Source: Amphiscolops sp. MND2022 (Eukaryota). From it: 64,000 nucleotides of DNA. The translations under genes were made by a program, and so were the position numbers. The number at the start of each line of letters is the position of its first letter. Position 1 is the first letter of the stretch. A model generated the notes under the pieces. The model was not told the DNA's origin. It searched no databases and was given only the letters and a program-made list of their open reading frames with translations. The DNA is taken from assembly GCA_964187785.1 (NCBI GenBank), contig OZ076412.1:67580001-67644000 (forward strand). Reading direction: 5' to 3'. Shown piece after piece: positions 1 to 18,800 of this stretch.

Positions 1-848
1 TGTAACGGCTGCTTGATCCCTTCAATTGACCAAGCTTTACGCCGCCCTGAATTCGGTGCTCGGCACTGCGGATCGTTACCGAACACTGCTTGCTTCTTAG
101 ATTAAAAGGACTGTATCTTGACTTAGTAGGATCCAATGATCCCGAATTGCACTTCTTCCTTGTCTCTTAACACGTCCAACTCTCCACAAGTTGAGAGTAA
201 CTAACTTAGTCGCCCTAAGTCTTTGGCGAAAAGTCGAAAAGAGGTGAAGAAATGAATTGAGAATTGAAATGGTCCTAAGACCCAACTCGAACACAGCCTC
301 CAATCAATTTGTGCCTATCTAGTTATGGTATACATATCGTTTACAATTCTACAGTAAATATAAGTCAAAATATGAAGTATAAATGAATGACATTTAAGTG
401 AATTATTAAAGTTATTGGTTATGTAAACAAACCATAGTGTGGGTATAGCATGTTGGTTAGGTGGGCTCTTAAGCATGTTTACACATTGTAAATATCATGA
501 ATTTCAACAGAGTTACATTCTAATGTGGTCATATAGGTAAATAAAGTTTACATTTTTGGTTCAATGACCTTGAACACTACACATGTGAGGGGTAAAGGGG
601 TTTATAATGGGTGAATGACCTTGAAACTTGGCCGGTAAGCTCGTGTTAGGTACTTGCACATGTGTGCCAAGTTTCATAGCTCTACGGTTAATAGTTGTCG
701 AGAAAACCCATTTGAGAGGGGGTTTGACGAAAATTGACGATCGAATTTTCTTCAAGTTTTCATCTAAGTTTCTAAGAGTTTAAGTCTTGTTTCGCAATCA
801 GCATGTTCTGAATTGAGTTTCTTTGCCTGCTGCTGACTGGCGCCAACA
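1..848 (-). repeat. 3' LTR of the BEL/Pao-like element
   Basis: TGTAACGG...GCGCCAACA; about 98% identical to 16913-17759 (roughly 15-17 substitutions and 3 small indels counted by eye). Confidence 0.92.
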
Positions 849-870
849 TTGCCGGCCCTGTTTTTCTCCC
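849..870 (-). other. Polypurine tract
   Basis: Minus strand reads GGGAGAAAAACAGGGCCGGCAA immediately before the TGTTGG start of the 3' LTR. Confidence 0.65.
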
Positions 871-985
871 GAAAAACACTTTCATAGAACAGGGGTGCCA
901 GTCCCACTACTGGTCTTTTGAGTTTGCCATCAATTGTCGTTGTCTTTCGGAGATCTACAGATTCATAGTCATGTTTCCCAGTTGT

Positions 986-1264
986 TTACTGTGTTCTTTC
1001 TTTACTGCAATGCTTCGCCAGCTCATAATCCCGATCACTGACCATAAGGTAGTTTTCGACAAGTTCACATAATACAACCAAGTGTTTCCAAAAAACTGTT
1101 CTCTCATTTGAAGTGATAGTTTTCCCAATTATCCCAAACTTGATCGTCAACGTCCGACATTCATTGAGTTCAACCAATTCCTTTTCTCTTGAACCTTTAA
1201 TAAGTATGATACAAAATTGCTTCAGTACATTTAACTCGACTTCCATAATTACTTCAACATCCAA
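986..1264 (-). pseudogene. Eroded BEL/Pao integrase C-terminal (DUF5641-like) remnant; unique continuation of the array ORF
   Basis: Begins with the same DVEVIMEV as the unit ORF end, then FCIILIKG...FGIIGKTITSNERTV, resembling the BEL GDIVLIKD...LGRIVKTFPGKDGIV pattern. Confidence 0.45.
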
Positions 1265-1295
1265 AGAATAGATTTCCAGATAAGTCGAAAATGTA

Positions 1296-2391
1296 TCAGA
1301 CAGTTTCCCAAGATTTGCTCTGCTTCACGGGTTTGTCTCGCGTCACTGTAACGTGGCATAGCTTTTGATACATGGCTAATTCATTCAAATCTTCCTGCAG
1401 TACACATTGCTGCTTTTTCACAAAACCATAACTTTGGTCCAATTCTAGACATTTGTTTCCTTCTTCAAGGAGTAGATTACTGTCATAAAACATTGTCACT
1501 TGGAATAGTTTCCCTTGTTGTACGTCCTGTGGTACGGTGGTGACTTCTGCACTCTTTTGCAGCAGTTCAAATTGCACACTCGGTTCTTCCGAAGTTTCAT
1601 TGTTCGATGTGAAGGCTAAGCTTCGATGCTCTTTCATAGTTTCAGTCATTGTGTAATCCAAGGTCTCTTCTGTTTGCACTTTCAAGTGCCCGCTTATGAC
1701 CTTGTGAATCTCGTCATTGAAAACTTGTTCTGTATCCACGAGGAAAGTTTCTGAATGGAAGTCTTGCCGACCATCGTTTACAACGAACGTTTCTGGCCAG
1801 TTCCGCATCCATTCTGCTGTGAGATTCTTCGAGGTGTCTTTGTTTGCATCGCTTTCAACATTTGTCATATTTGAGTCTTCATGTGCTTCACGTTTGATAA
1901 TTTTGTCTTGCAACTTTCCATGGCTTGGACACTTGTCTGAACACTTCATCTGCTCAGGTTGCCATTTTTTCCTTGTACACTTTCCTTTTGTTGTACAGTC
2001 AAGAGCTTTGAGCAAAGCCCTTTCTTCTTGCTTGCCCATACATTCGTTTTTTCTTTTCAGCGATTCATTTCGATCACTCGAACTTTGTTTGCTCGAAGTT
2101 TGCTTTGTTTGAGTTTGCTTCACCGTTCTCATCATTGAACTAGTTTCAACGATTTTATGGTTCGAGCGCCAATGTGATAAAACAATGCACTTTGAATCAA
2201 TTCGCCCAAAACGGGGTTTCTTGTTGTTTCTCAGGTGTGACTCCTTGTCCGTCATTGCATTCATGTCGTTCTGAGAGAGTGCTTCGTCCACGCAGTTCAG
2301 TTCCTGTAAGAGGCTTTGTTGAGGTCGACATTGCCTTGACGGTCCGATAACATTCCAGCGGACCTTTGCATGGTTGCAACTGCTTTGTCAC
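1296..2391 (-). pseudogene. Terminal array unit U0: frameshifted, with an internal deletion of about 0.9 kb
   Basis: ORFs 2197-2391 and 1296-2291 are frameshifted halves of the unit ORF; the junction GATTTGCTCTGCT|TCACGGG at about 1324 skips sequence equivalent to about 2521-3418. Confidence 0.85.
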
Positions 2392-2411
2392 TTTCTGTGA
2401 TTGTGTCGGTC

Positions 2412-4487
2412 TCAGCCAAGTTCCATTTCGCCAACTTCCATAATTACTTCAACATCCAAAGAATAGATTTCCAGACAAGTCGAAAATGTCTCCAGACAGT
2501 TTCCCAAGATTTGCTCTGCTACATATTTCCTCATCAAAGTTGACTGACCGCGGATGAGATATGTCAAAGAGAGTTCGTTCTCTAATTGTTCCATACTCAA
2601 GCTTTCAATTTGGCGTTCGGGAGCGATTATTGAATCATCCATCATCATCACCAAGAGATAAAGAGAATTTCCAACATTACGGCGACTGGAGTTTTTTCCT
2701 TTGTGTTCAATGCTCTCTTTGCATCCAACAGGAGGGGATTTGAGTTGTAATCTCAAACGCTGCGCTGCATTTTGCTTTTTCTTTTCTGGCAGGTCGTTTT
2801 TCGTAGCTACATCCCAGTTTTCTCTTAGTAACTGCAATGCTGTGGAGTTTGGCTTTCGCTCCTGTTTGTAGAGCGTCACCGAGCTTCTCTCACCGCAAAA
2901 CTCCAATTTCATTTCATGTGGGTTTCTTACAGGCTCCCGTTGATCATGAGAAACTTCCAATTTACCAAAACGCCCATACTGAACCCACATTGTCTTGAAC
3001 GGTGCAGCCGGCCCATTGCAAGACCCGTTGCTCCAACTTGTTGCTGTTGGGACTTTCAAAGAAGATATTTGCATTCTCGTCACCGATAGGTTGTCTCTCA
3101 AATCATGTAGCCAAAGTGGCTCGTCTTGTGGTGTTCCATTCACGTTCAACTGAGCTCCTTCCGCTATTTCCTGTATCAGATTCCAGTTATGTTCAATCTT
3201 CCAAGATCTTTTCGTCAGTTGCTTGCGGTGGCCGTTGCTCAATTGAGTTTCATCAATGACGTTAGCTTGTGCCACTGCGTCCATCCCTGAGTTGCCATTA
3301 CCAGTCCAAAGGTTCCATGCATTTCTATGACTTGGAATATATTCTTCAACAAGGTTTATTTCGAAGTCAAAGTCAGGTTTCCTTTCGAAGGTTTGTTTAT
3401 AATCTCTGACATTGCCTTTCACGGGTTTGTCGCGCGTCATGGTAACGTGGCATAGCTGTTGATACATGGCTAATTCATTCAAATCTTCCTGCAGTACACA
3501 TTGCTGCTCTTTCACAAAACCATAACTTTGGTCCAATTCAAGACATTTGTTTCCTTCTTCAAGGAGTAGATTACTGTCATAAAACATTGTCACTTGGAAT
3601 AGTTTCCCTTGTTGTACGTCCTGTGGTACGGTGGTGACTTCTGCACTCTTTTGCAGCAGTTCAAATTGCACACTCGGTTCTTCCGAAGTTTCATTGTTCG
3701 ATGTGAAGGCTAAGCTTCGATGCTCTTTCATAGTTTCAGTCATTGTGTAATCCAAGGTCTCTTCTGTTTGCACTTTCAAGTACCCGCTCATGACCATGTG
3801 AATCTCGTCATTGAAAACTTGTTCTGTATCCACGAGGAGAGTTTCTGAATGGAAGTCTTGCCGGCCATCGTTTACAACGAACGTTTCTGGCCAGTTCCGC
3901 CTCCATTCTGCTGTGAGATTCTTCGAGGTGTCTTTGTTCGCATCGCTTTCAACATTTGTCATATTTGAGTCTTCATGTGCTTCACGTTTGATAATTTTGT
4001 CTTGCAACTTTCCATGGCTTGGACACTTGTCTGAACACTTCATCTGCTCAGGTTGCCATTTTTTCCTTGTACACTTTCCTTTTGTTGTACAGTCAAGAGC
4101 TTTGAGCAAAGCCCTTTCTTCTTGCTTGCCCATACATTCGTCTTTTCTTTTCAGCGATTCATTTCGATCAATTGAACTTTGTTTGCTCGAAGTTTGCTTT
4201 GTTTGAGTTTGCTTCACCGTTCTCATCATTGAACTAGTTTCAACGATTTTATGGTTCGAGCGCCAATGTGATAAAACAATGCACTTTGAATCAATTCGCC
4301 CAAAACTGGGTTCCTTGTTGTTTCTCAGGTGTGACTCCTTGTCCGTCACTGCATTCATGTCGTTCTGAGAACGAGTGCTTCGTCCACGCAGTTCAGTTCC
4401 TGTAAGAGGCTTTGTTGAGGTCGACATTGCCTTGACGGTCCGATAACATTCCAGCGGACCTTTGCATGGTTGCAACTGCTTTGCCAC
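2412..4487 (-). CDS. Array unit U1: intact 691-codon ORF, unknown protein with faint BEL/Pao polyprotein remnants
   Basis: Open frame (track start is GTG; first ATG is about codon 21). Weak by-eye similarity to BEL motifs: LLVDTEQ (protease-like), LDQSYGFVKEQ...YQQLCHVTM and YIPSHRNAW (pre-RT-like), PFKTMWVQYGRFG and LTYLIRGQS (integrase-like). Confidence 0.55.
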   Translation of the reverse strand: MAKQLQPCKGPLECYRTVKAMSTSTKPLTGTELRGRSTRSQNDMNAVTDKESHLRNNKEPSFGRIDSKCIVLSHWRSNHKIVETSSMMRTVKQTQTKQTSSKQSSIDRNESLKRKDECMGKQEERALLKALDCTTKGKCTRKKWQPEQMKCSDKCPSHGKLQDKIIKREAHEDSNMTNVESDANKDTSKNLTAEWRRNWPETFVVNDGRQDFHSETLLVDTEQVFNDEIHMVMSGYLKVQTEETLDYTMTETMKEHRSLAFTSNNETSEEPSVQFELLQKSAEVTTVPQDVQQGKLFQVTMFYDSNLLLEEGNKCLELDQSYGFVKEQQCVLQEDLNELAMYQQLCHVTMTRDKPVKGNVRDYKQTFERKPDFDFEINLVEEYIPSHRNAWNLWTGNGNSGMDAVAQANVIDETQLSNGHRKQLTKRSWKIEHNWNLIQEIAEGAQLNVNGTPQDEPLWLHDLRDNLSVTRMQISSLKVPTATSWSNGSCNGPAAPFKTMWVQYGRFGKLEVSHDQREPVRNPHEMKLEFCGERSSVTLYKQERKPNSTALQLLRENWDVATKNDLPEKKKQNAAQRLRLQLKSPPVGCKESIEHKGKNSSRRNVGNSLYLLVMMMDDSIIAPERQIESLSMEQLENELSLTYLIRGQSTLMRKYVAEQILGNCLETFSTCLEIYSLDVEVIMEVGEMELG

Positions 4488-4507
4488 TTTCTGTGATTGT
4501 GTCGGTC

Positions 4508-6583
4508 TCAGCCAAGTTCCATTTCGCCAACTTCCATAATTACTTCAACATCCAAAGAATAGATTTCCAGATAAGTCGAAAATGTCTCCAGACAGTTTCC
4601 CAAGATTTGCTCTGCTACAAATTTCCTCATCAAAGTTGACTGACCGCGGATGAGATATGTCAAAGAGAGTTCGTTCTCTAATTGTTCCATACTCAAGCTT
4701 TCAATTTGGCGTTCGGGAGCGATTATTGAATCATCCATCATCATCGCCAATAGATAAAGAGAATTTCCAACATTACGGCGACTGGAGTTTTTTCCTTTGT
4801 GTTCGATGCTCTCTTTGCATCCAATAGGAGGGGATTTGAGTTGTAATCTCAGTCGCTGCGCTGCATTTTGCTTTTTCTTTTCTGGCAGGTCGTTTTTCGT
4901 AGCTACATCCCAGTTTTCTCTTAGTAACTGCAATGCTGTGGAGTTTGGCTTTCGCTACTGTTTGTAGAGCGTCACCGAGCTTCTCTCACCGCAAAACTCC
5001 AATTTCATTTCATGTGGGTTTCTTACAGGCTCCCGTAGATCATGAGAAACTTCCAATTTACCAAAACGCCCATACTGAACCCACATTGTCTTGAACGGTG
5101 CAGCCGGCCCATTGCAAGACCCGTTGCTCCAACTTGTTGCTGTTGGGACTTTCAAAGAAGATATTTGCATTCTCGTCACCGATAGGTTGTCTCTCAAATC
5201 ATGTAGCCAAAGTGGCTCGTCTTGTGGTGTTCCATTCACGTTCAACTGAGCTCCTTCCGCTATTTCCTGTATCAGATTCCAGTTATGTTCAATCTTCCAA
5301 GATCTTTTCGTCAGTTGCTTGCGGTGGCCGTTGCTCAATTGAGTTTCATCAATGACGTTAGCTTGTGCCACTGCGTCCATCCCTGAGTTGCCATTACCAG
5401 TCCAAAGGTTCCATGCATTTCTATGACTTGGAATATATTCTTCAACAAGGTTTATTTCGAAGTCAAAGTCAGGTTTCCTTTCGAAGGTTTGTTTATAATC
5501 TCTGACATTGCCTTCCACGGGTTTGTCGCGCGTCATGGTAACGTGGCATAGCTGTTGATACATGGCTAATTCATTCAAATCTTCCTGCAGTACACATTGC
5601 TGCTCTTTCACAAAACCATAACTTTGGTCCAATTCAAGACATTTGTTTCCTTCTTCAAGGAGTAGATTACTGTCATAAAACATTGTCACTTGGAATAGTT
5701 TCCCTTGTTGTACGTCCTGTGGTACGGTGGTGACTTCTGCACTCTTTTGCAGCAGTTCAAATTGCACACTCGGTTCTTCCGAAGTTTCATTGTTCGATGT
5801 GAAGGCTAAGCTTCGATGCTCTTTCATAGTTTCAGTCATTGTGTAATCCAAGGTCTCTTCTGTTTGCACTTTCAAGTGCCCGCTCATGACCATGTGAATC
5901 TCGTCATTGAAAACTTGTTCTGTATCCACGAGGAGAGTTTCTGAATGGAAGTCTTGCCGGCCATCGTTTACAACGAACGTTTCTGGCCAGTTCCGCCTCC
6001 ATTCTGCTGTGAGATTCTTCGAGGTGTCTTTGTTCGCATCGCTTTCAACATTTGTCATATTTGAGTCTTCATGTGCTTCACGTTTGATAATTTTGTCTTG
6101 CAACTTTCCATGGCTTGGACACTTGTCTGAACACTTCATCTGCTCAGGTTGCCATTTTTTCCTTGTACACTTTCCTTTTGTTGTACAGTCAAGAGCTTTG
6201 AGCAAAGCCCTTTCTTCTTGCTTGCCCATACATTCGTCTTTTCTTTTCAGCGATTCATTTCGATCAATTGAACTTTGTTTGCTCGAAGTTTGCTTTGTTT
6301 GAGTTTGCTTCACCGTTCTCATCATTGAACTAGTTTCAACGATTTTATGGTTCGAGCGCCAATGTGATAAAACAATGCACTTTGAATCAATTCGCCCAAA
6401 ACTGGGTTCCTTGTTGTTTCTCAGGTGTGACTCCTTGTCCGTCACTGCATTCATGTCGTTCTGAGAACGAGTGCTTCGTCCACGCAGTTCAGTTCCTGTA
6501 AGAGGCTTTGTTGAGGTCGACATTGCCTTGACGGTCCGATAACATTCCAGCGGACCTTTGCATGGTTGCAACTGCTTTGCCAC
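4508..6583 (-). pseudogene. Array unit U2: ORF truncated at codon 543 by GAG->TAG
   Basis: ORFs 4955-6583 and 4508-4933 are in the same frame; plus strand TTCGCTACTG versus TTCGCTCCTG in intact units. Confidence 0.8.
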
Positions 6584-6603
6584 TTTCTGTGATTGTGTCG
6601 GTC

Positions 6604-8679
6604 TCAGCCAAGTTCCATTTCGCCAACTTCCATAATTACTTCAACATCCAAAGAATAGATTTCCAGATAAGTCGAAAATGTCTCCAGACAGTTTCCCAAG
6701 ATTTGCTCTGCTACATATTTCCTCATCAAAGTTGACTGACCGCGGATGAGATATGTCAAAGAGAGTTCGTTCTCTAATTGTTCCATACTCAAGCTTTCAA
6801 TTTGGCGTTCGGGAGCGATTATTGAATCATCCATCATCATCGCCAATAGATAAAGAGAATTTCCAACATTACGGCGACTGGAGTTTTTTCCTTTGTGTTC
6901 GATGCTCTCTTTGCATCCAATAGGAGGGGATTTGAGTTGTAATCTCAGTCGCTGCGCTGCATTTTGCTTTTTCTTTTCTGGCAGGTCGTTTTTCGTAGCT
7001 ACATCCCAGTTTTCTCTTAGTAACTGCAATGCTGTGGAGTTTGGCTTTCGCTACTGTTTGTAGAGCGTCACCGAGCTTCTCTCACCGCAAAACTCCAATT
7101 TCATTTCATGTGGGTTTCTTACAGGCTCCCGTAGATCATGAGAAACTTCCAATTTACCAAAACGCCCATACTGAACCCACATTGTCTTGAACGGTGCAGC
7201 CGGCCCATTGCAAGACCCGTTGCTCCAACTTGTTGCTGTTGGGACTTTCAAAGAAGATATTTGCATTCTCGTCACCGATAGGTTGTCTCTCAAATCATGT
7301 AGCCAAAGTGGCTCGTCTTGTGGTGTTCCATTCATGTTCAACTGAGCTCCTTCCGCTATTTCCTGTATCAGATTCCAGTTATGTTCAATCTTCCAAGATC
7401 TTTTCGTCAGTTGCTTGCGGTGGCCGTTGCTCAATTGAGTTTCATCAATGACGTTAGCTTGTGCCACTGCGTCCATCCCTGAGTTGCCATTACCAGTCCA
7501 AAGGTTCCATGCATTTCTATGACTTGGAATATATTCTTCAACAAGGTTTATTTCGAAGTCAAAGTCAGGTTTCCTTTCGAAGGTTTGTTTATAATCTCTG
7601 ACATTGCCTTCCACGGGTTTGTCGCGCGTCATGGTAACGTGGCATAGCTGTTGATACATGGCTAATTCATTCAAATCTTCCTGCAGTACACATTGCTGCT
7701 CTTTCACAAAACCATAACTTTGGTCCAATTCAAGACATTTGTTTCCTTCTTCAAGGAGTAGATTACTGTCATAAAACATTGTCACTTGGAATAGTTTCCC
7801 TTGTTGTACGTCCTGTGGTACGGTGGTGACTTCTGCACTCTTTTGCAGCAGTTCAAATTGCACACTCGGTTCTTCCGAAGTTTCATTGTTCGATGTGAAG
7901 GCTAAGCTTCGATGCTCTTTCATAGTTTCAGTCATTGTGTAATCCAAGGTCTCTTCTGTTTGCACTTTCAAGTACCCGCTCATGACCATGTGAATCTCGT
8001 CATTGAAAACTTGTTCTGTATCCACGAGGAGAGTTTCTGAATGGAAGTCTTGCCGGCCATCGTTTACAACGAACGTTTCTGGCCAGTTCCGCCTCCATTC
8101 TGCTGTGAGATTCTTCGAGGTGTCTTTGTTCGCATCGCTTTCAACATTTGTCATATTTGAGTCTTCATGTGCTTCACGTTTGATAATTTTGTCTTGCAAC
8201 TTTCCATGGCTTGGACACTTGTCTGAACACTTCATCTGCTCAGGTTGCCATTTTTTCCTTGTACACTTTCCTTTTGTTGTACAGTCAAGAGCTTTGAGCA
8301 AAGCCCTTTCTTCTTGCTTGCCCATACATTCGTCTTTTCTTTTCACCGATTCATTTCGATCAATTGAACTTTGTTTGCTCGAAGTTTGCTTTGTTTGAGT
8401 TTGCTTCACCGTTCTCATCATTGAACTAGTTTCAACGATTTTATGGTTCGAGCGCCAATGTGATAAAACAATGCACTTTGAATCAATTCGCCCAAAACGG
8501 GGTTCCTTGTTGTTTCTCAGGTGTGACTCCTTGTCCGTCACTGCATTCATGTCGTTCTGAGAGTGAGTGCTTCGTCCACGCAGTTCAGTTCCTGTAAGAG
8601 GCTTTGTTGAGGTCGACATTGCCTTGACGGTCCGATAACATTCCAGCGGACCTTTGCATGGTTGCAACTGCTTTGTCAC
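6604..8679 (-). pseudogene. Array unit U3: same nonsense allele as U2
   Basis: ORFs 7051-8679 and 6604-7029; identical stop position. Confidence 0.8.
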
Positions 8680-8699
8680 TTTCTGTGATTGTGTCGGTC

Positions 8700-10775
8700 T
8701 CAGCCAAGTTCCATTTCGCCAACTTCCATAGTTACTTCAACATCCAAAGAATAGATTTCCAGACAAGTCGAAAATGTCTCCAGACAGTTTCCCAAGATTT
8801 GCTCTGCTACATATTTCCTCATCAAAGTTGACTGACCGCGGATGAGATATGTCAAAGAGAGTTCGTTCTCTAATTGTTCCATACTCAAGCTTTCAATTTG
8901 GCGTTCGGGAGCGATTATTGAATCATCCATCATCATCACCAAGAGATAAAGAGAATTTCCAACATTACGGCGACTGGAGTTTTTTCCTTTGTGTTCAATG
9001 CTCTCTTTGCATCCAATAGGAGGGGATTTGAGTTGTAATCTCAGTCGCTGCGCTGCATTTTGCTTTTTCTTTTCTGGCAGGTCGTTTTTCGTAGCTACAT
9101 CCCAGTTTTCTCTTAGTAACTGAAATGCTGTGGAGTTTGGCTTTCGCTCCTGTTTGTAGAGCGTCACCGAGCTTCTCTCACCGCAAAACTCCAATTTCAT
9201 TTCATGTGGGTTTCTTACAGGCTCCCGTAGATCATGAGAAACTTCCAATTTACCAAAACGCCCATACTGAACCCACATTGTCTTGAACGGTGCAGCCGGC
9301 CCATTGCAAGACCCGTTGCTCCAACTTGTTGCTGTTGGGACTTTCAAAGAAGATATTTGCATTCTCGTCACCGATAGGTTGTCTCTCAAATCATGTAGCC
9401 AAAGTGGCTCGTCTTGTGGTGTTCCATTCACGTTCAACTGAGCTCCTTCCGCTATTTCCTGTATCAGATTCCAGTTATGTTCAATCTTCCAAGATCTTTT
9501 CGTCAGTTGCTTGCGGTGGCCGTTGCTCAATTGAGTTTCATCAATGACGTTAGCTTGTGCCACTGCGTCCATCCCTGAGTTGCCATTACCAGTCCAAAGG
9601 TTCCATGCATTTCTATGACTTGGAATATATTCTTCAACAAGGTTTATTTCGAAGTCAAAGTCAGGTTTCCTTTCGAAGGTTTGTTTATAATCTCTGACAT
9701 TGCCTTCCACGGGTTTGTCGCGCGTCATGGTAACGTGGCATAGCTGTTGATACATGGCTAATTCATTCAAATCTTCCTGCAGTACACATTGCTGCTCTTT
9801 CACAAAACCATAACTTTGGTCCAATTCAAGACATTTGTTTCCTTCTTCAAGGAGTAGATTACTGTCATAAAACATTGTCACTTGGAATAGTTTCCCTTGT
9901 TGTACGTCCTGTGGTACGGTGGTGACTTCTGCACTCTTTTGCAGCAGTTCAAATTGCACACTCGGTTCTTCCGAAGTTTCATTGTTCGATGTGAAGGCTA
10001 AGCTTCGATGCTCTTTCATAGTTTCAGTCATTGTGTAATCCAAGGTCTCTTCTGTTTGCACTTTCAAGTACCCGCTCATGACCATGTGAATCTCGTCATT
10101 GAAAACTTGTTCTGTATCCACGAGGAGAGTTTCTGAATGGAAGTCTTGCCGGCCATCGTTTACAACGAACGTTTCTGGCCAGTTCCGCCTCCATTCTGCT
10201 GTGAGATTCTTCGAGGTGTCTTCGTTCGCATCGCTTTCAACATTTGTCATATTTGAGTCTTCATGTGCTTCACGTTTGATAATTTTGTCTTGCAACTTTC
10301 CATGGCTTGGACACTTGTCTGAACACTTCATCTGCTCAGGTTGCCATTTTTTCCTTGTACACTTTCCTTTTGTTGTACAGTCAAGAGCTTTGAGCAAAGC
10401 CCTTTCTTCTTGCTTGCCCATACATTCGTCTTTTCTTTTCAGCGATTCATTTCGATCAATTGAACTTTGTTTGCTCGAAGTTTGCTTTGTTTGAGTTTGC
10501 TTCACCGTTCTCATCATTGAACTAGTTTCAACGATTTTATGGTTCGAGCGCCAATGTGATAAAACAATGCACTTTGAATCAATTCGCCCAAAACTGGGTT
10601 CCTTGTTGTTTCTCAGGTGTGACTCCTTGTCCGTCACTGCATTCATGTCGTTCTGAGAACGAGTGCTTCGTCCACGCAGTTCAGTTCCTGTAAGAGGCTT
10701 TGTTGAGGTCGACATTGCCTTGACGGTCCGATAACATTCCAGCGGACCTTTGCATGGTTGCAACTGCTTTGTCAC
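8700..10775 (-). CDS. Array unit U4: intact 691-codon ORF
   Basis: Open frame nearly identical to U1. Confidence 0.55.
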   Translation of the reverse strand: MTKQLQPCKGPLECYRTVKAMSTSTKPLTGTELRGRSTRSQNDMNAVTDKESHLRNNKEPSFGRIDSKCIVLSHWRSNHKIVETSSMMRTVKQTQTKQTSSKQSSIDRNESLKRKDECMGKQEERALLKALDCTTKGKCTRKKWQPEQMKCSDKCPSHGKLQDKIIKREAHEDSNMTNVESDANEDTSKNLTAEWRRNWPETFVVNDGRQDFHSETLLVDTEQVFNDEIHMVMSGYLKVQTEETLDYTMTETMKEHRSLAFTSNNETSEEPSVQFELLQKSAEVTTVPQDVQQGKLFQVTMFYDSNLLLEEGNKCLELDQSYGFVKEQQCVLQEDLNELAMYQQLCHVTMTRDKPVEGNVRDYKQTFERKPDFDFEINLVEEYIPSHRNAWNLWTGNGNSGMDAVAQANVIDETQLSNGHRKQLTKRSWKIEHNWNLIQEIAEGAQLNVNGTPQDEPLWLHDLRDNLSVTRMQISSLKVPTATSWSNGSCNGPAAPFKTMWVQYGRFGKLEVSHDLREPVRNPHEMKLEFCGERSSVTLYKQERKPNSTAFQLLRENWDVATKNDLPEKKKQNAAQRLRLQLKSPPIGCKESIEHKGKNSSRRNVGNSLYLLVMMMDDSIIAPERQIESLSMEQLENELSLTYLIRGQSTLMRKYVAEQILGNCLETFSTCLEIYSLDVEVTMEVGEMELG

Positions 10776-10795
10776 TTTCTGTGATTGTGTCGGTC

Positions 10796-12870
10796 TCAGC
10801 CAAGTTCCATTTCGCCAACTTCCAAAATTACTTCAACATCCAAAGAATAGATTTCCAGATAAGTCGAAAATGTCTCCAGACAGTTTCCCAAGATTTGCTC
10901 TGCTACATATTTCCTCATCAAAGTTGACTGACCGCGGATGAGATATGTCAAAGAGAGTTCGTTCTCTAATTGTTCCATACTCAAGCTTTCAATTTGGCGT
11001 TCGGGAGCGATTATTGAATCATCCATCATCATCGCCAATAGATAAAGAGAATTTCCAACATTACGGCGACTGGAGTTTTTTCCTTTGTGTTCGATGCTCT
11101 CTTTGCATCCAATAGGAGGGGATTTGAGTTGTAATCTCAGTCGCTGCGCTGCATTTTGCTTTTTCTTTTCTGGCAGGTCGTTTTTCGTAGCTACATCCCA
11201 GTTTTCTCTTAGTAACTGTAATGCTGTGGAGTTTGGCTTTCGCTACTGTTTGTAGAGCGTCACCGAGCTTCTCTCACCGCAAAACTCCAATTTCATTTCA
11301 TGTGGGTTTCTTACAGGCTCCCGTAGATCATGAGAAACTTCCAATTTACCAAAACGCCCATACTGAACCCACATTGTCTTGAACGGTGCAGCCGGCCCAT
11401 TGCAAGACCCGTTGCTCCAACTTGTTGCTGTTGAGACTTTCAAAGAAGATATTTGCATTCTCGTCACCGATAGGTTGTCTCTCAAATCATGTAGCCAAAG
11501 TGGCTCGTCTTGTGGTGTTCCATTCACGTTCAACTGAGTTCCTTCCGCTATTTCCTGTATCAGATTCCAGTTATATTCAATCTTCCAAGATCTTTTCGTC
11601 AGTTGCTTGCGGTGGCCGTTGCTCAATTGAGTTTCATCAATGACATTAGCTTGTGCCACTGCGTCCATCCCTGAGTTGCCATTACCAGTCCAAGGGTTCC
11701 ATGCATTTCTATGACTTGGAATATGTTCTTCAACAAGGTTTATTTCGAAGTCAAAGTCAGGTTTCCTTTCGAAGGTTTGTTTATCATCTCTGACATTGCC
11801 TTCCACGGGTTTGTCGCGCGTCACTGTAACGTGGCATAGCTTTTGATACACGCTAATTCATTCAAATCTTCCTGCAGTACACATTGCTGCTCTTTCACAA
11901 AACCATAACTTTGGTCCAATTCAAGACATTTGTTTCCTTCTTCAAGGAGTAGATTACTGTCATAAAACATTGTCACTTGGAATAGTTTCCCTTGTTGTAC
12001 GTCCTGTGGTACGGTGGTGACTTCTGCACTCTTTTGCAGCAGTTCAAATTGCACACTCGGTTCTTCCGAAGTTTCATTGTTCGATGTGAAGGTTAAGCTT
12101 CGATGCTCTTTCATAGTTTCAGTCATTGTGTAATCCAAGGTCTCTTCTGTTTGCACTTTCAAGTGCCCGCTCATGACCATGTGAATCTCGTCATTGAAAA
12201 CTTGTTCTGTATCCACGAGGAGAGTTTCTGAATGGAAGTCTTGCCGGCCATCGTTTACAACGAACGTTTCTGGCCAGTTCCGCCTCCATTCTGCTGTGAG
12301 ATTCTTCGAGGTGTCTTTGTTGGCATCGCTTTCAACATTTGTCATATTTGAGTCTTCATGTGCTTCACGTTTGATAATTTTGTCTTGCAACTTTCCATGG
12401 CTTGGACACTTGTCTGAACACTTCATCTGCTCAGGTTGCCATTTTTTCCTTGTACACTTTCCTTTTGTTGTACAGTCAAGAGCTTTGAGCAAAGCCCTTT
12501 CTTCTTGCTTGCCCATACATTCGTCTTTTCTTTTCACCGATTCATTTCGATCAATTGAACTTTGTTTGCTCGAAGTTTGCTTTGTTTGAGTTTGCTTCAC
12601 CGTTCTCATCATTGAACTAGTTTCAACGATTTTATGGTTCGAGCGCCAATGTGATAAAACAATGCACTTTGAATCAATTCGCCCAAAACGGGGTTCCTTG
12701 TTGTTTCTCAGGTGTGACTCCTTGTCCGTCACTGCATTCATGTCGTTCTGAGAGTGAGTGCTTCGTCCACGCAGTTCAGTTCCTGTAAGAGGCTTTGTTG
12801 AGGTCAACATTGCCTTGACGGTCCGATAACATTCCAGCGGACCTTTGCATGGTTGCAACTGCTTTGTCAC
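10796..12870 (-). pseudogene. Array unit U5: 1-bp deletion plus the shared nonsense allele
   Basis: Unit is 2095 bp; the frame breaks near 11850 (NELA|CIKSY) and the E->stop allele is at about 11243. Confidence 0.8.
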
Positions 12871-12890
12871 TTTCTGTGATTGTGTCGGTC

Positions 12891-14966
12891 TCAGCCAAGT
12901 TCCATTTCGCCAACTTCCATAATTACTTCAACATCCAAAGAATAGATTTCCAGATAAGTCGAAAATGTCTCCAGACAGTTTCCCAAGATTTGCTCTGCTA
13001 CATATTTCCTCATCAAAGTTGACTGACCGCGGATGAGATATGTCAAAGAGAGTTCGTTCTCTAATTGTTCCATACTCAAGCTTTCAATTTGGCGTTCGGG
13101 AGCGATTATTGAATCATCCATCATCATCACCAAGAGATAAAGAGAATGTCCAACATTACGGCGACTGGAGTTTTTTCCTTTGTGTTCAATGCTCTCTTTG
13201 CATCCAATAGGAGGGGATTTGAGTTGTAATCTCAGTCGCTGCGCTGCATTTTGCTTTTTCTTTTCTGGCAGGTCGTTTTTCGTAGCTACATCCCAGTTTT
13301 CTCTTAGTAACTGCAATGCTGTGGAGTTTGGCTTTCGCTCCTGTTTGTAGAGCGTCACCGAGCTTCTCTCACCGCACAACTCCAATTTCATGTCATGTGG
13401 GTTTCTTACAGGCTCCCGTAGATCATGAGAAACTTCCAATTTACCAAAACGCCCATACTGAACCCACATTGTCTTGAACGGTGCAGCCGGCCCATTGCAA
13501 GACCCGTTGCTCCAACTTGTTGCTGTTGGGACATTCAAAGAAGATATTTGCATTCTCGTCACCGATAGGTTGTCTCTCAAATCATGTAGCCAAAGTGGCT
13601 CGTCTTGTGGTGTTCCATTCACGTTCAACTGAGCTCCTTCCGCTATTTCATGTATCAGATTCCAGTTATGTTCAATCTTCCAAGATCTTTTCGTCAGTTG
13701 CTTGCGGTGGCCGTTGCTCAATTGAGTTTCATCAATGACGTTAGCTTGTACCACTGCGTCCATCCCTGAGATGTCATTACCAGTCCAAGGGTTCCATGCA
13801 TTTCTATGAGTTGGAATATATTCTTCAACAAGGTTTATTTCGAAGTCAAAGTCAGGTTTCCTTTCGAAGGTTTGTTTATCATCTCTGACATTGCCTTCCA
13901 CGGGTTTGTCTCGCGTCACTGTAACGTGGCATAGCTTTTGATACATGGCTAATTCATTCAAATCTTCCTGCAGTACACATTGCTGCTCTTCCACAAAACC
14001 ATAACTTTGGTCCAATTCAAGACATTTGTTTCCTTATTCAAGGAGTAGATTACTGTCATAAAACATTGTCACTTGGAATAGTTTCCCTTGTTGTACGTCC
14101 TGTGGTACGGTGGTGACTTCTGCACTCTTTTGCAGCAGTTCAAATTGCACACTCGGTTCTTCCGAAGTTTCATTGTTCGATGTGAAGGCTAAGCTTCGAT
14201 GCTCTTTCATAGTTTCAGTCATTGTGTAATCCAAGGTCTCTTCTGTTTGCACTTTCAAGTGCCCGCTCATGACCATGTGAATCTCGTCATTGAAAACTTG
14301 TTCTGTATCCACGAGGAGAGTTTCTGAATGGAAGTCTTGCTGGCCATCGTTTACAACGAACGTTTCTGGCCAGTTCCGCATCCATTCTGCTGTGAGATTC
14401 TTCGAGGTGTCTTTGTTTGCATCGCTTTCAACATTTGTCATATTTGAGTCTTCATGTGCTTCACGTTTGATGATTTTTTCTTGCAACTTTCCATGGCTTT
14501 GACACTTGTCTGAACACTTCATCTGCTCAGGTTGCCATTTTTTCCTTGTACACTTTCCTTTTGTTGTACAGTCAAGAGCTTTGAGCAAAGCCCTTTCCTC
14601 TTGCTTGCCCATACATTCGTCTTTTCTTTTCAGCCATTCATTTTGATCACTTGAACTTTGTTTGCTCGAAGTTTGCTTTGTTCGAGTTTGCTTCACCGTT
14701 CTCATCATTGAACTAGTTTCAACGATTTTATGGTTCGAGCGCCAATGTGATAAAACAATGCACTTTGAATCAATTCGCCCAAAACGGGGTTCCTTGTTGT
14801 TTCTCAGGTGTGACTCCTTGTCCGTCACTGCATTCATGTCGTTCTCAGAGTGAGTGCTTCGTCCACGCAGTTCAGTTCCTGTAAGAGGCTTTGTTGAGGT
14901 CGACATTGCCTTGACGGTCCGATAACATTCCAGCGGACTTTTGCATGGTTGCAACTGCTTTGTCAC
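12891..14966 (-). pseudogene. Array unit U6: private GAA->TAA stop
   Basis: ORFs 14034-14966 and 12891-14015 are in frame; TCCTTATTCA versus TCCTTCTTCA at about 14035. Confidence 0.8.
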
Positions 14967-16013
14967 TTTGTGATTGTGTCGGCCTCAGCCAAGTTCCACT
15001 TCGCGCTAATTCTATTTCTTGGTTGGCAACGTGTTTAGTCCTCGCGCTTTCTTCTTCGAGCCTAGCAATTTCGAGTTGTTCCGCTAGTATCCTCATGTCC
15101 ATTTCCTCTTGTTTCTTTCGGATCTCGGCTTTGCGTCTTGCGGCAGCTAGCTGTTCATCAATTTCATCTTGTTTCTTCATTGCTTCCAATTCTAGAAGAA
15201 GTATTCGTTTTGCATTTGATGACTTAGAACTAGCTGTTGTTCTGTTGCTCTTTGAGGTTGCTTTGACTGACCCTTTGTTGCTTTGTTCGGGTAAGACTTT
15301 CACATCACTGATTGATTTAATCACATCAGATCAGAGGGGTTGGATGCTCCAAAAACACGTCCTTCCTCTTCAGTTACCCTGCTTGACTGTGCCAGTGATT
15401 TACTTTCACTGGTTACTTCTACTGAGCAATTGCGTTTTGTTCGATTGAAGCTAGTTTGCTTGAGCTTCCTTGTGTGAGTGCATCTCATAGTCGCATCTGT
15501 GGAGATTCCACTTGCCACTTGGCGAAGTTTTGTTTTGTTTGTCTCATCTTTTGGGCCCTTCAACGTTGTCTTCACATCAGGGAACCAATATCCCCAGCTG
15601 GCTTCTAATTGTGCAAAGAATTCTTCCCATTCAGTCACACTTCGACTGAGCTGTCTTTGCTTTTCTTCATTTGTGAGGTCCAACATAAGATCTACGTTAT
15701 GCAACATTGCTTGTTTATTTTCGCGATATTCGAATACCCAATCATTCAATTCACCTTTGCAAAGACTAGCGCCTTGCTCGTCAAGCTTGTCATCCAAGTC
15801 TTTAATCAGAGTCAGTAGTCTTCCAACTTGGGTGGCCACAGCGTCCACATAAAAGCGCCACACGTACCAGTCGGAATCATTTTCCAAATCTCTTAATCTG
15901 GGGTCCATCAGTTCTTGGCTCTGATTTGTGTTTCTTTGATCAAATACATTTGTCATTCGAGGATGTTGCACCTCGAGCATTTCTTTCTTTCTGGCTTTCA
16001 TTTGTTCAGACAA
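14872..16013 (-). pseudogene. Gag-like region of the BEL/Pao element, split into two overlapping ORFs (230 aa and 150 aa)
   Basis: First ORFs downstream of the PBS; helical acidic segment followed by Ser-rich plus coiled-coil ASSKSSNAKRILLLELEAMKKQ...AAARRKAE, typical of BEL gag N-termini; runs into the array in another frame. Confidence 0.55.
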
Positions 16014-16892
16014 CAGTTTTGTTTAGCTGAGGGCTTTCTAACTACACAATAGTTTCTTGTCAATTTTGTAATTTTTCCCAAATTCCGCAAATTGTTAGAT
16101 CTGAAGTATCAACTGCTCAACCCAGTAATCAGTCGCCAATTCTTGAAGAATCAACCCAACAATGTCGATTATGCTTGCCTTCTTTGACGAACTTGGTTGT
16201 TTCGGTGGATCTCGTCCCTCTGACTTGATCCCTTTGCTTTACTTGGTGGATATTCTTGCAGCGACGTCTTAGTTCAGCCTTTGCTTTCAATTACGAATAG
16301 GTTTCGCAAGGATACAATTCGTCCCAAACTGGATTTGAAGCACACTTGCCTCCAGAGTGCTGCTAAAGCCCAACTCCCAGAGTACACAACCAATCCAGTT
16401 CCAAATCGCCCAATAGTCCAATACCAAAGCCCCAGTGTACACTTTCACAGAGTTCCAATCACCAACTGTAGACCCAATTTCCACAGTTCTCGTTCGTCGT
16501 GAGTAGTCGTTTCAGCTACTTGTCGCGATTCCGTTTGAGTGCGAGGACTCTTGCAATACTTTTCGATTGCTGTTTGAACAAGATCACCTGCTGTCACTTT
16601 TACGTTTGGAAGGTCCCTACAATTAGGCTTGTCCTTCCAGCTCTCTAGTTTGCCAATGAAACCAGCACGGAAGCTCTTTCAAACTTCGTGTCACTTGAAC
16701 AGATAGATGTTGTGCCACCCGTTTGATGACTGTAACTGCTCACGTGTCTTCCAACGCAAATGTTATACACACGTGATGAAGACGACGTTCCTCTTGTAGT
16801 GTCCATCCAGATTGATGTCCACTCCAACTGTTGATGTAAGCCCAATGTGTTGATGTCCGCCCCAAACTGATGAAGTCCGCCCAATCGATGAT

Positions 16893-16910
16893 GTCCGGGT
16901 CGGCGGACCA
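16893..16910 (-). other. Primer-binding site, tRNA-Tyr-like
   Basis: Minus strand TGGTCCGCCGACCCGGAC lies 2 nt after the LTR; the implied tRNA has C1-G72/A73, the eukaryotic Tyr identity, and resembles the Pao PBS TGGTCCTTCGAGCCGGA. Confidence 0.7.
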
Positions 16911-16912
16911 AA

Positions 16913-17759
16913 TGTAACGGCTGCTTGATCCCTTCACTTGACCAAGCTTTACGCCGCCCTGAATTCGGTGCTCGGCACTGCGGATCGTTACCGAACACTG
17001 CTTGCTTCTTAGATTAAAAGGACTGTATCTTGACTTAGTAGGATCCAATGATTCCGAATTGCACTTCTTCCTTGTCTCTTAACACGTCCAACTCTCAAGT
17101 TGAGAGTAACTAACTTAGTCACCCTAAGTCTTTGGCGAAAAGTCGAAAAGAGGTGAAGAAATGAATTGAGATTTGAAATGGTCCTAAGACCCAACTCGAA
17201 TACAGCCTCCAATCAATTTGTGCCTATCTAGTTATGGTATACATATCGTTTACAATTCTACAGTAAATACAAGTCAAAATATGAAGTATAAATGAATGAC
17301 ATTCAAGTGAATTATTAAAGTTATTGGTTATGTAAACAAACCATAGTGTGGGTATAGCATGTTGGTTAGGTGGGCTCTAAAGCATGTTTACACATTGTAA
17401 ATATCATGTATTTCAACAGAGTTACATTCTAATGTGGTCATATAGGTAAATAACAAAGTTTACATTTTTGGTTCAATGACCTTGAACACTACACATGTGA
17501 GGGGTAAAGGGGGTTATAATGGGTGAATGACCTTGAAACTTGGCCGGTAAGCTCGTGTTAGGTACTTGCACATGTGTGCCAAGTTTCATAGCTCTACGGT
17601 TAATAGTTGTCGAGAAAACCCATTTAGGGGGGTTTTGACGAAAATTGACGATCGAATTTTCTTCAAGTTTTCATCTAAGTTTCAAAGAGTTTAAGTCTTG
17701 TTTCTCAATCAGCATGCTCTGAATCGAGTTTCTTTGCCTGCTGCTGACTGGCGCCAACA
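16913..17759 (-). repeat. 5' LTR of the BEL/Pao-like element
   Basis: 847-bp near-identical copy of 1-848 with TG...CA ends. Confidence 0.92.
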
Positions 17760-18800
17760 CAGTGGGAATATTATCTTCGGATCTTTGTCAAACCGATTGT
17801 CTGTGTGAAGTTCGATGATGATCATATCGGTAAATCCTTGTCCCAGCAATACCCACAGTTCCTTAAGACATATCAGGGATCAGATCCAATCTTCAAAGTT
17901 CTTTATCACGTACAATCTTGGAAAGAGCCACCACCACGGTGCACGCTCGCATTTGCTTCAACTACCCATTCGCCCTGCTTGATCCTTGGACTTGTTACAA
18001 GGTGCAACGTCAAAAGTTTCCTGCAGGTCAAAAGGTGGTCATCATTTGAGACAAAAATTTACAATCAGGAATGGCATACGATATGCTCAGTAGAGCCAAA
18101 CTTGTCTGACATTTCAATAACGGGCCAATTTGCGCCGAGGAAGATCCTATGTATTGAAGGGGCAAGGGTTAAGTGTGAATTTCTCGCCATCATCCACTGC
18201 CAAAAAGATGAACAGCTCACTGATTGCTGTCTGAACATTCAATCCCTAAATGGAAATCTGGAAGACCTCAAAGCAGACTATTTAGTGACTTCATGTACCG
18301 TTGTGTTGCTTTGCGAAACGTGGCTGGGAACTGAATATCCAGATAGCGCGCTCCATCTCAAATTCTTGAAAATCAATCATCTGAAAGGATGAGGGCGAAT
18401 TGGAGCGCTGTTCCGACAGATGTCAACACTGACTTCGCAATTTACACTTTGCTGATCTAAGTAACTCTGCTGTCGAAACGATTTTCAATGATAGCAGTGT
18501 ATCGTACGCACCAGGGTCAGCTTTCATGAATAGCCTGAAAAATCATCACTGGCAAGACTGCACTCATAAAGGGCGCTTTCAATTCCCCAGACTTCCAAGA
18601 TCGAAGGCTTCCTCAGAAGCTAGGATTTGTACACGTCGTGTCCGCACCAAAGCCACGTCGAGCCGGCAAGAAACTTGACCTTTGTTTGGCACAATTTCTG
18701 GACGTGTCACTCTTCATTCATCCCTGGCACTATTACCAAGAGTGCCTATGTATGGCTGTCCATGGCATCGAATTTTAGCCTATAAAATTTTGCTAGTGTG
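17760..18800 (+). mobile_element. Helentron (Helitron) remnant: PIF1-helicase C-terminus plus AP-endonuclease start
   Basis: VKFDDDHIGK...TLAFASTTH (helicase LAFASTIHK motif) followed by LNIQSL...LLCETWL (EEP/APE motif I); degenerate. Confidence 0.55.

What the first reader, a model, noticed from the sequence alone, without database searches (positions are those of the whole stretch)
1239..15004. LTR retroelement carrying a 13.8-kb tandem array of a 691-codon ORF instead of pol
Seen: between two ~98% identical LTRs, more than three quarters of a 17.76-kb element is a head-to-tail 2096-bp unit (six full copies, one deleted); each unit is almost entirely one ORF with its own stop, intact in U1 and U4. 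Known: BEL/Pao elements normally have a single gag-pol ORF; internal tandem repeats in LTR elements are usually short or non-coding. Inference: either a retroelement-borne gene amplification (dosage of an element-derived protein, or a small-RNA trap/source) or the birth of a long-unit satellite inside a retroelement.
Basis: partly seen in the sequence, partly recalled or inferred. Interest (0 to 1): 0.85.

Follow-up and report, generated by a model that had tools for sequence, protein, structure and literature searches.

The report
Internal duplication array in defective retrotransposon
One old copy of a common, pol-less LTR retrotransposon has repeated a 2.1-kb piece of its own reading frame seven times head to tail; the repeat is real in the assembly, but it looks like a neutral one-off accident, not an amplified gene.

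Summary
A 17,762-bp LTR element lies on the minus strand: LTRs at 1-848 and 16913-17762 (1.9% apart), a 5-bp target duplication CAGTG, a PBS for tRNA-Tyr and a PPT. It contains six full copies and one deleted copy of a 2,096-bp unit (1237-15004).

The interpretation needs correcting on several points.
- **The unit is not a gene.** It is an internal slice (about residues 339-1037) of the single 1,173-1,206-aa ORF carried by the normal 6.1-kb members of this family, which has at least 903 candidate matches in the 1.07-Gb genome.
- **The 'own stop' is a junction effect.** 2096 = 3n+2, so each junction shifts the frame and a TGA follows six codons later.
- **Nothing replaced pol.** The whole family lacks pol. 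It is a non-autonomous derivative related to BEL/Pao-type ORFs that carry DUF1759 and DUF5641.
- **The array is unique.** The junction occurs six times in the genome, all of them here.
- **The units drift neutrally.** They carry two nonsense changes, two frameshifts and one 0.9-kb deletion, and the element's ORF is already broken upstream of the array.
- **Timing.** The edge units are about as old as the insertion, and the inner units are younger.

Copy number could not be checked with long reads, and expression could not be tested.

Verdict: an ordinary, single-locus tandem expansion, at most a proto-satellite. Low interest.

The parts
16913..17762 (-). 5' LTR (850 bp, TGT...ACA termini)
   Evidence: Aligns with 1-848. 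16 mismatches in 844 sites and 3 indel events.
17763..17767 (.). Target-site duplication CAGTG (right copy). The left copy is the 5 bases just before window position 1.
   Evidence: Left flank from L013. Right flank from the alignment.
16893..16910 (-). Primer-binding site, 18 nt, two bases after the 5' LTR. It is complementary to the 3' end (+CCA) of an intron-containing tRNA-Tyr (GTA).
   Evidence: Sequence. The genome holds tRNA genes ending in the exact complement. The Rfam tRNA model scores 58.3 bits, and the anticodon loop was read by eye as CTGTAGA.
16812..16897 (.). Short 19/38-bp tandem repeat in the leader, next to the PBS
   Evidence: Tandem Repeats Finder
15005..16001 (-). N-terminal part of the family ORF (the ATG at 16001 corresponds to MKARKKEM...). 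In this copy it is broken by a frameshift near 15324.
   Evidence: ORFs 15321-16013 and 14872-15324 lie in different frames. Intact relatives L003 and L005 read straight through.
12911..15004 (-). Unit S1 (2094 bp): a 2-bp deletion, one nonsense change and 22 private derived substitutions
10816..12910 (-). Unit S2 (2095 bp): a 1-bp deletion, and a nonsense change shared with S4 and S5
8720..10815 (-). Unit S3 (2096 bp), open throughout (691-codon ORF 8700-10775)
6624..8719 (-). Unit S4 (2096 bp), with the shared nonsense change (GAG to TAG, unit codon 556)
4528..6623 (-). Unit S5 (2096 bp), with the same shared nonsense change
2432..4527 (-). Unit S6 (2096 bp), open throughout (691-codon ORF 2412-4487)
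1237..2431 (-). Unit S7: the first 1106 nt and the last 89 nt of a unit, with about 0.9 kb deleted between them. 10 private derived substitutions.
849..1236 (-). 3' unique internal part (C-terminal end of the family ORF). Includes the polypurine tract at 870-856. In intact relatives the frame runs on into the 3' LTR.
1..848 (-). 3' LTR

Best explanation
This is one copy of an abundant, non-autonomous LTR retrotransposon family related to BEL/Pao elements. Normal members are 6.1 kb long and carry a single ORF of 1,173-1,206 aa with no pol. A 2,096-bp piece from the middle of that ORF was duplicated once by an illegitimate join with little or no microhomology. That one junction was then multiplied to seven units by homology-driven unequal exchange, slippage or conversion between units.

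The first duplication dates to about the time of integration (inferred). It most simply arose as a backward template switch during the reverse transcription that made this copy, or very soon afterwards. The inner units were added later.

The '691-codon ORF with its own stop' is a by-product. The unit lies wholly inside a longer frame, and 2096 = 3n+2, so reading across a junction shifts the frame and meets a TGA six codons on.

The array has no detectable function. It is decaying neutrally inside an element whose own ORF is already broken. It is a one-off structural variant of one element copy, at most a proto-satellite.
For: **Shown**
1. Six close relatives are LTR-internal-LTR elements of 5.8-6.1 kb with one copy of the unit region. 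Three of them hold an uninterrupted frame of 1,042-1,212 aa that spans it.
2. The unit corresponds to about residues 339-1037 of that ORF. All six junctions are identical, and the frame ends ...EV|GEMELG-stop just past the junction.
3. The 24-nt junction motif, allowing up to 3 mismatches, occurs 6 times in the 1.07-Gb genome. All 6 are in this array, and the control pattern gives 0.
4. Complete LTR-element anatomy on the minus strand: TSD, an 18/18 PBS for tRNA-Tyr, and a PPT.
5. LTR divergence is 1.9%, or about 0.95% per LTR. S1 has 22 private derived changes in 2094 nt (1.05%) and S7 has 10 in 1106 nt (0.90%). Inner units differ from each other by 0.4-0.9% and show mosaic shared variants.
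6. Of 74 substitutions among units, 17 are synonymous (0.23, against a neutral expectation of 0.21-0.27) and 2 are nonsense. Pooled pN/pS among the real units is 0.79. There are also two frameshifts and a 0.9-kb deletion. Intact family ORFs elsewhere give dN/dS of 0.48-0.70.
7. The element's ORF is frameshifted near 15324, upstream of the array.
8. The unit ORF has no Pfam domain, no atlas neighbour and no predicted fold: pLDDT is below 50 for residues 338-1173.

**Inferred**
- The mechanism of the first join.
- The mode of later growth.
Against: - No long read spanning the array was available, so the copy number rests on the assembly alone.
- Depths of short contigs did not track the assembled copy numbers cleanly. 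For example, an S1-specific segment shows about 4x the depth of the one flanking contig. The true number of units could therefore differ.
- Two units still have fully open frames, and pooled pN/pS is 0.79 rather than 1. With so few changes, weak constraint cannot be formally excluded.
- Expression and small RNAs could not be examined.
- Only 39 of at least 903 family candidates were scored and 7 elements were inspected in full. Other family members with different internal duplications may exist.
Confidence: 0.8

Rival explanations
1. Assembly artefact: the genome has one or two units at this locus, and the assembler expanded a repeat.
For: No read spanning the array was available. The Logan contigs here are only about 100-190 nt long, and their depths do not match the assembled copy numbers well.
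Against: - The seven units are not identical. They carry unit-specific substitutions, two different indels, a shared nonsense change in three units and a 0.9-kb deletion in one.
- Divergence is graded: the edges are about 2% from the rest and the centre differs by 0.4-0.9%. Real arrays look like this. Artefactual expansion would give identical or randomly noisy copies.
- A contig with 0 mismatches that is specific to array units sits at about 4-5x the flank depth in three runs.
Confidence: 0.07
2. Functional amplification: the array raises the dose of an element-derived protein, or serves as a source or trap for small RNAs against the family of roughly 900 copies.
For: - Two units keep a 691-codon open frame.
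- The family ORF is weakly constrained elsewhere, with dN/dS of 0.5-0.7.
- A seven-fold repeat homologous to an abundant family could in principle feed a small-RNA pathway. This is an inference with no data behind it.
Against: - The unit frame has no start of its own. It lies downstream of a broken ORF with many upstream ATGs.
- Three of six full units share a nonsense codon, two have frameshifts, and substitutions fit neutrality.
- The unit region has no domain and no predicted fold.
- The array occurs at one locus only.
- No RNA run holding the stretch was on record.
Confidence: 0.05
3. The arrayed form is itself a transposing subfamily: the duplication arose in a master copy and is inherited by its daughters.
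For: The edge units are at least as old as the insertion, so the first duplication could pre-date integration.
Against: - The junction is found nowhere else in the genome.
- The closest relatives are only about 90% identical and have a single unit.
Confidence: 0.04

Closest known systems
Retrotransposon-derived tandem repeats (maize CRM1TR/CRM4TR, PMC3648361; arrays inside Ogre-type elements of Lathyrus that sometimes expand into satellites, PMC7004042)
   Same: A segment of an LTR retrotransposon becomes a head-to-tail array. It starts with an illegitimate join, then grows and is homogenised by recombination or gene conversion. The array is local and its edge units are older.
   Different: - Those cases are in plants and involve Ty3/gypsy elements. 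Their repeats come from the LTR/UTR or 3' untranslated regions, and many have reached long arrays or several loci.
- Here the element is an animal BEL/Pao-related non-autonomous element, and the unit is a 2.1-kb slice of the coding frame.
- There are only seven units, at one locus, still enclosed by both LTRs.
Non-autonomous LTR retrotransposons that keep an ORF (TR-GAG type) or none (LARD, TRIM); named from my own knowledge, with the terms found in PMC13570524
   Same: Intact LTRs, PBS and PPT, no RT or IN, a high copy number, and presumably mobilisation in trans by an autonomous partner.
   Different: - The ORF here is very long (about 1,170-1,200 aa) and has no recognisable gag domain.
- It shows only an N-terminal helical region plus a coiled coil, then about 800 residues with no predicted fold.
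- The partner element was not identified.
BEL/Pao LTR retrotransposons
   Same: - A 5-bp TSD, TGT...ACA LTR ends and a tRNA-primed PBS.
- The ORF's middle (residues 534-861) and last 44 residues are homologous to ORFs of the same genome that carry the BEL/Pao gag domain DUF1759, an aspartic-protease remnant and the integrase-tail domain DUF5641.
   Different: - No protease, RT, RNase H or integrase.
- No Pfam hit at all on this family's ORF.
- No profile similarity to the integrase block of autonomous BEL/Pao copies of the genome.
Direct duplications made by reverse-transcriptase template switching in retroviruses and retroelements (own knowledge, not tested)
   Same: A single, precise, non-homologous junction inside the element, dated to about the time of integration.
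   Different: Such duplications are usually single. The later growth to seven units needs DNA-level unequal exchange.

Membership tests
LTR retrotransposon (structural definition) | Two direct long terminal repeats with TG...CA ends | tested here: met
   LTRs 1-848 and 16913-17762 are 98.1% identical at aligned sites, with TGT...ACA ends.
LTR retrotransposon (structural definition) | Target-site duplication of 4-6 bp | tested here: met
   CAGTG on both sides
LTR retrotransposon (structural definition) | PBS complementary to a tRNA 3' end next to the 5' LTR, and a PPT next to the 3' LTR | tested here: met
   An 18-nt PBS matches tRNA-Tyr genes of the same genome. A purine tract lies at 870-856.
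BEL/Pao superfamily | Pol with an A17-type aspartic protease, RT, RNase H and integrase | tested here: not met
   No Pfam family on the unit ORF, on other ORFs of the element, or on intact ORFs of relatives. No profile match to the integrase block of autonomous copies.
BEL/Pao superfamily | Gag with DUF1759, and integrase tail DUF5641 | tested here: inconclusive
   Absent from this family's ORF. However, the ORF is homologous (hhalign probability 100%, E 2.3e-69) to ORFs of the same genome that carry both domains. This is descent by deletion, not membership by domain content.
Satellite DNA | Long arrays (tens of kb to Mb), usually at several loci | tested here: not met
   Seven units, 13.8 kb. 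The junction occurs only at this locus.
Amplified protein-coding gene | Each copy has its own start and stop, and the frame is kept by purifying selection | tested here: not met
   - The unit is internal to a longer ORF, and the stop is created by the junction frame shift.
- Substitutions are neutral, with nonsense and frameshift changes in 4 of 6 full units.
TR-GAG type non-autonomous element | The ORF encodes a recognisable GAG/capsid domain only | tested here: inconclusive
   No gag family in Pfam. The AlphaFold2 model shows only low-confidence N-terminal helices and a coiled coil at 262-343.

The most novel reading that the evidence does not exclude
The array was born during the very reverse-transcription event that produced this copy and has kept growing since. 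That would make it a caught-in-the-act origin of a long-monomer (2.1-kb) satellite from the coding region of an animal BEL/Pao-derived element. Its repeated, family-homologous transcripts might feed small-RNA silencing of the family of roughly 900 copies.
Probability: 0.08. Interest if true: 0.5.

Novelty: new member of a known kind. Interest (0 to 1): 0.2.

Why it matters
**If the array is real.** It is a clean, datable example of how a tandem repeat starts inside a transposable element. There is one illegitimate junction, then homology-driven growth, with the LTRs serving as an internal clock. That is useful as an illustration but not surprising.

**For genome annotation.** The '691-codon ORFs' here should not be called as genes.

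**The family itself.** This side result may interest transposon specialists more than the array does. The family is very abundant and has no pol, yet it keeps a long ORF that is largely without predicted structure, under weak constraint. Size variants of about 900, 1,170 and 1,450 aa trace a stepwise loss of gag and pol domains.

Tried and rejected
- **Pfam** on the unit ORF, neighbouring ORFs and intact relatives found nothing meaningful.
- **ESM Atlas** gave no usable neighbour.
- **HMMER against 1.84 billion representatives** gave 417 hits. The listed 150 are all fragments of the same family, and none leads to a known domain.
- **AlphaFold2** on the 1,173-aa ORF with a 45-sequence alignment gave a mean pLDDT of 30.8, so no fold search was run. 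This does not support the idea that the unit is a 'compressed, catalytically dead polyprotein' with surviving folds. The alignment is shallow, so the negative result is weak.
- **Search for the autonomous partner.**
  - 30 DUF5641 loci of the genome share no DNA with the element and are only 31-45% identical to the sister family's DUF5641.
  - A search with the sister family's C-terminus found only non-autonomous classes with frames of about 906 and 1,452-1,466 aa.
- **Reads.** Only Logan contigs of about 100-190 nt lie on the repeat. They cannot bridge units, and their depths are confounded by the family. No RNA run was on record.
- **Consensus use.** One search used a per-column majority inside the script only to count synonymous and non-synonymous changes. 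One search repeats the test with real units only.
Full report
**What is there**

The repeat finder gives seven in-register copies spaced 2094-2096 bp apart. Self-BLAST of the element places the array at window 15004 down to 1326, followed by the last 89 nt of a unit at 1325-1237. All long ORFs lie on the minus strand. They include two of 691 codons, at 2412-4487 and 8700-10775. In a full unit one frame has no stop, while the other two have 42 and 49.

The LTRs are 1-848 and 16913-17762, with 16 mismatches in 844 sites. Fetching the 10 kb to the left of the window showed unrelated sequence ending in CAGTG. The same 5 bases follow the right LTR, so there is a 5-bp target-site duplication. The start of the left LTR at window position 1 is a coincidence.

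On the minus strand the 5' LTR is followed, after two bases, by an 18-nt primer-binding site (16910-16893). This site is the exact complement of the 3' end plus CCA of tRNA genes in the same genome. One such gene scores 58.3 bits with the Rfam tRNA model. It reads as an intron-containing tRNA-Tyr with anticodon loop CTGTAGA. That anticodon is my reading, because ARAGORN could not name it. A purine tract at 870-856 abuts the 3' LTR.

**What the unit is**

A search of the animal's own 1.07-Gb genome with one unit gave at least 903 candidates. The 39 that were scored are 85-90% identical, and each covers the unit once. I fetched 20 kb around six of them. Each is an LTR-internal-LTR element of 5.8-6.1 kb with a single copy of the unit region. 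One locus holds two such elements in tandem sharing an LTR.

Three of these elements carry one uninterrupted frame of 1,042-1,212 aa that fills nearly the whole internal region. Examples are L003:1065-4586 (1,173 aa) and L005:1062-4682 (1,206 aa). The unit corresponds to about residues 339-1037 of that ORF.

All six junctions in the array are identical: the end of the unit (...ATGGAAGTTG) is joined to its start (GCGAAATGG...). There is at most one or two bases of microhomology to the normal flanks. Because 2096 = 3x698+2, reading across a junction changes frame. The translation ends ...EVIMEV, then GEMELG, then TGA. The stop-free stretch is 710 codons, which is one unit plus 17 nt on each side. 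The 'ORF with its own stop' is thus a geometric consequence of duplicating an ORF-internal segment. 'Intact in U1 and U4' means only that those two units have not yet acquired a stop.

**What family it is**

Neither the unit ORF nor the intact ORFs of relatives hit any Pfam family. The word-indexed protein search found 175 relatives, all from one ENA source. One of them, P0089, is encoded 100% identically in this genome. More distant relatives of about 900 aa carry DUF5641. They share the N-terminal 330 residues, residues 523-861 and the last 44 residues with our ORF.

A further class of about 1,452 aa carries four elements in order: DUF1759 (the BEL/Pao gag domain), zinc knuckles with a weak aspartic-protease match, the same middle block, and DUF5641. 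Profile-profile comparison links our family to that class with probability 100% and E 2.3e-69 over residues 534-861 plus the tail. It finds nothing in common with the zinc-finger/rve/DUF5641 block of autonomous BEL/Pao copies from the genome.

The exhaustive HMMER search returned only fragments of the same family among the 150 hits listed. The ESM Atlas returned nothing. AlphaFold2 with a 45-sequence alignment gave a mean pLDDT of 30.8. It shows low-confidence helices in residues 1-140 and a long helix at 262-343, with everything from 338 to 1173 below 50.

I read the family as a non-autonomous deletion derivative of a BEL/Pao-type element. It has kept a long ORF that is largely without predicted structure. 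Pairwise dN/dS among five intact or nearly intact copies is 0.48-0.70, which indicates weak constraint. This is expected when part of the divergence accrued in active lineages. No autonomous partner was found.

**Is the array recurrent, selected or old?**

The 24-nt junction motif, allowing 3 mismatches, occurs six times in the whole genome, all in this array. The reversed control gives none.

Among the seven units there are 74 substitutions. Of these, 17 are synonymous (0.23, against a neutral expectation of 0.21-0.27), 55 are non-synonymous and 2 are nonsense. One of the nonsense changes is shared by S2, S4 and S5. Using only real units pairwise, pooled pN/pS is 0.79. S1 has a 2-bp deletion, S2 a 1-bp deletion and S7 a 0.9-kb deletion. 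Upstream of the array the element's ORF is already frameshifted near 15324. Translation from the family's start codon would therefore stop after about 230 residues. Nothing points to selection on the units.

I polarised variable sites with seven relatives as outgroups.
- S1 has 22 private derived changes in 2094 nt (1.05%).
- S7 has 10 private derived changes in 1106 nt (0.90%).
- Half the LTR-LTR divergence is 0.95%.

The two edge units have therefore evolved separately for about as long as the LTRs have. Inner units differ from each other by 0.4-0.9% and share variants in mosaic patterns. This fits later rounds of unequal exchange and conversion.

No other locus has the junction, so the first duplication most likely arose at integration or very soon after. 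A backward template switch of reverse transcriptase is the simplest single-step source (inference).

**Assembly question**

The only public runs that hold the stretch are kept as Logan contigs. On this repeat those contigs are about 100-190 nt long and cannot bridge a unit.

An array-specific contig with no mismatches (12572-12687, present in six assembled units) sits at 3.9-5.2x the depth of the one flanking contig in three runs of one sample. Other segments do not track the assembled copy number, because family copies share words. I treat this as inconclusive.

The internal evidence argues that the units are real, separate copies. That evidence is the unit-specific indels, the shared nonsense change, the deletion and the older edges. 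The exact number of units still needs long reads.

**Comparison with what is known**

Tandem repeats that start inside LTR retrotransposons and grow by recombination or conversion are documented in plants. In maize, CRM1TR and CRM4TR derive from the LTR plus UTR (PMC3648361). In Lathyrus, short arrays inside retrotransposons occasionally expand into satellites (PMC7004042).

The present case follows the same logic in an animal, in a BEL/Pao-related non-autonomous element. The unit is unusually long and derived from coding sequence. The array is small, occurs at a single locus and is still enclosed by its LTRs. It is a new example of a known kind, not a new kind.

**Limits**

- No RNA data were available.
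The majority states were used only for counting.

Noticed in passing
G000:C6:56171500-56192800 (own genome, outside the window); examples L057, L059: More than 100 matches to the 3' end of the tRNA-Tyr gene lie about 212 bp apart on one strand, out of 438 matches genome-wide. This could be a very large tandem cluster of tRNA-Tyr genes or of tRNA-derived repeats. This tRNA is the one that primes the element family.
   Followed up: partly
G000:C1:27761890-27772923 (L014+L020): Two elements of the same family lie head to tail and share the middle LTR (LTR-internal-LTR-internal-LTR). Their LTRs match only the last 520 bp of the window's LTR.
   Followed up: partly
own genome; proteins P0089 (900 aa), P0300 (1452 aa); locus L056:4001-6703: There are two sister families of non-autonomous BEL/Pao derivatives, each with many intact copies. 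One has frames of about 906 aa and keeps only DUF5641. The other has frames of about 1,452-1,466 aa with gag DUF1759, zinc knuckles, a DSG aspartic-protease remnant, a shared domainless middle block and DUF5641. Neither has RT or integrase.
   Followed up: partly
window 849-900, and L003/L005 ORF ends: The family ORF reads through the polypurine tract and ends about 45 nt inside the 3' LTR.
   Followed up: partly
window 16812-16897: A 19/38-bp tandem repeat (2.3-3.7 copies) lies in the leader directly after the PBS. Its units resemble the GGCGGAC core of the PBS region.
   Followed up: no
window 17805-18392 (+): A 195-codon open frame lies just outside the right LTR. It has no Pfam hit, and its end (…CETWLG…) recalls the start of LINE endonuclease domains. 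The element may have inserted into an old LINE fragment.
   Followed up: no
own genome: There are at least 6,215 first-look candidates for DUF5641, many within open frames of 1,650-1,770 aa. The genome is rich in apparently intact BEL/Pao elements.
   Followed up: no
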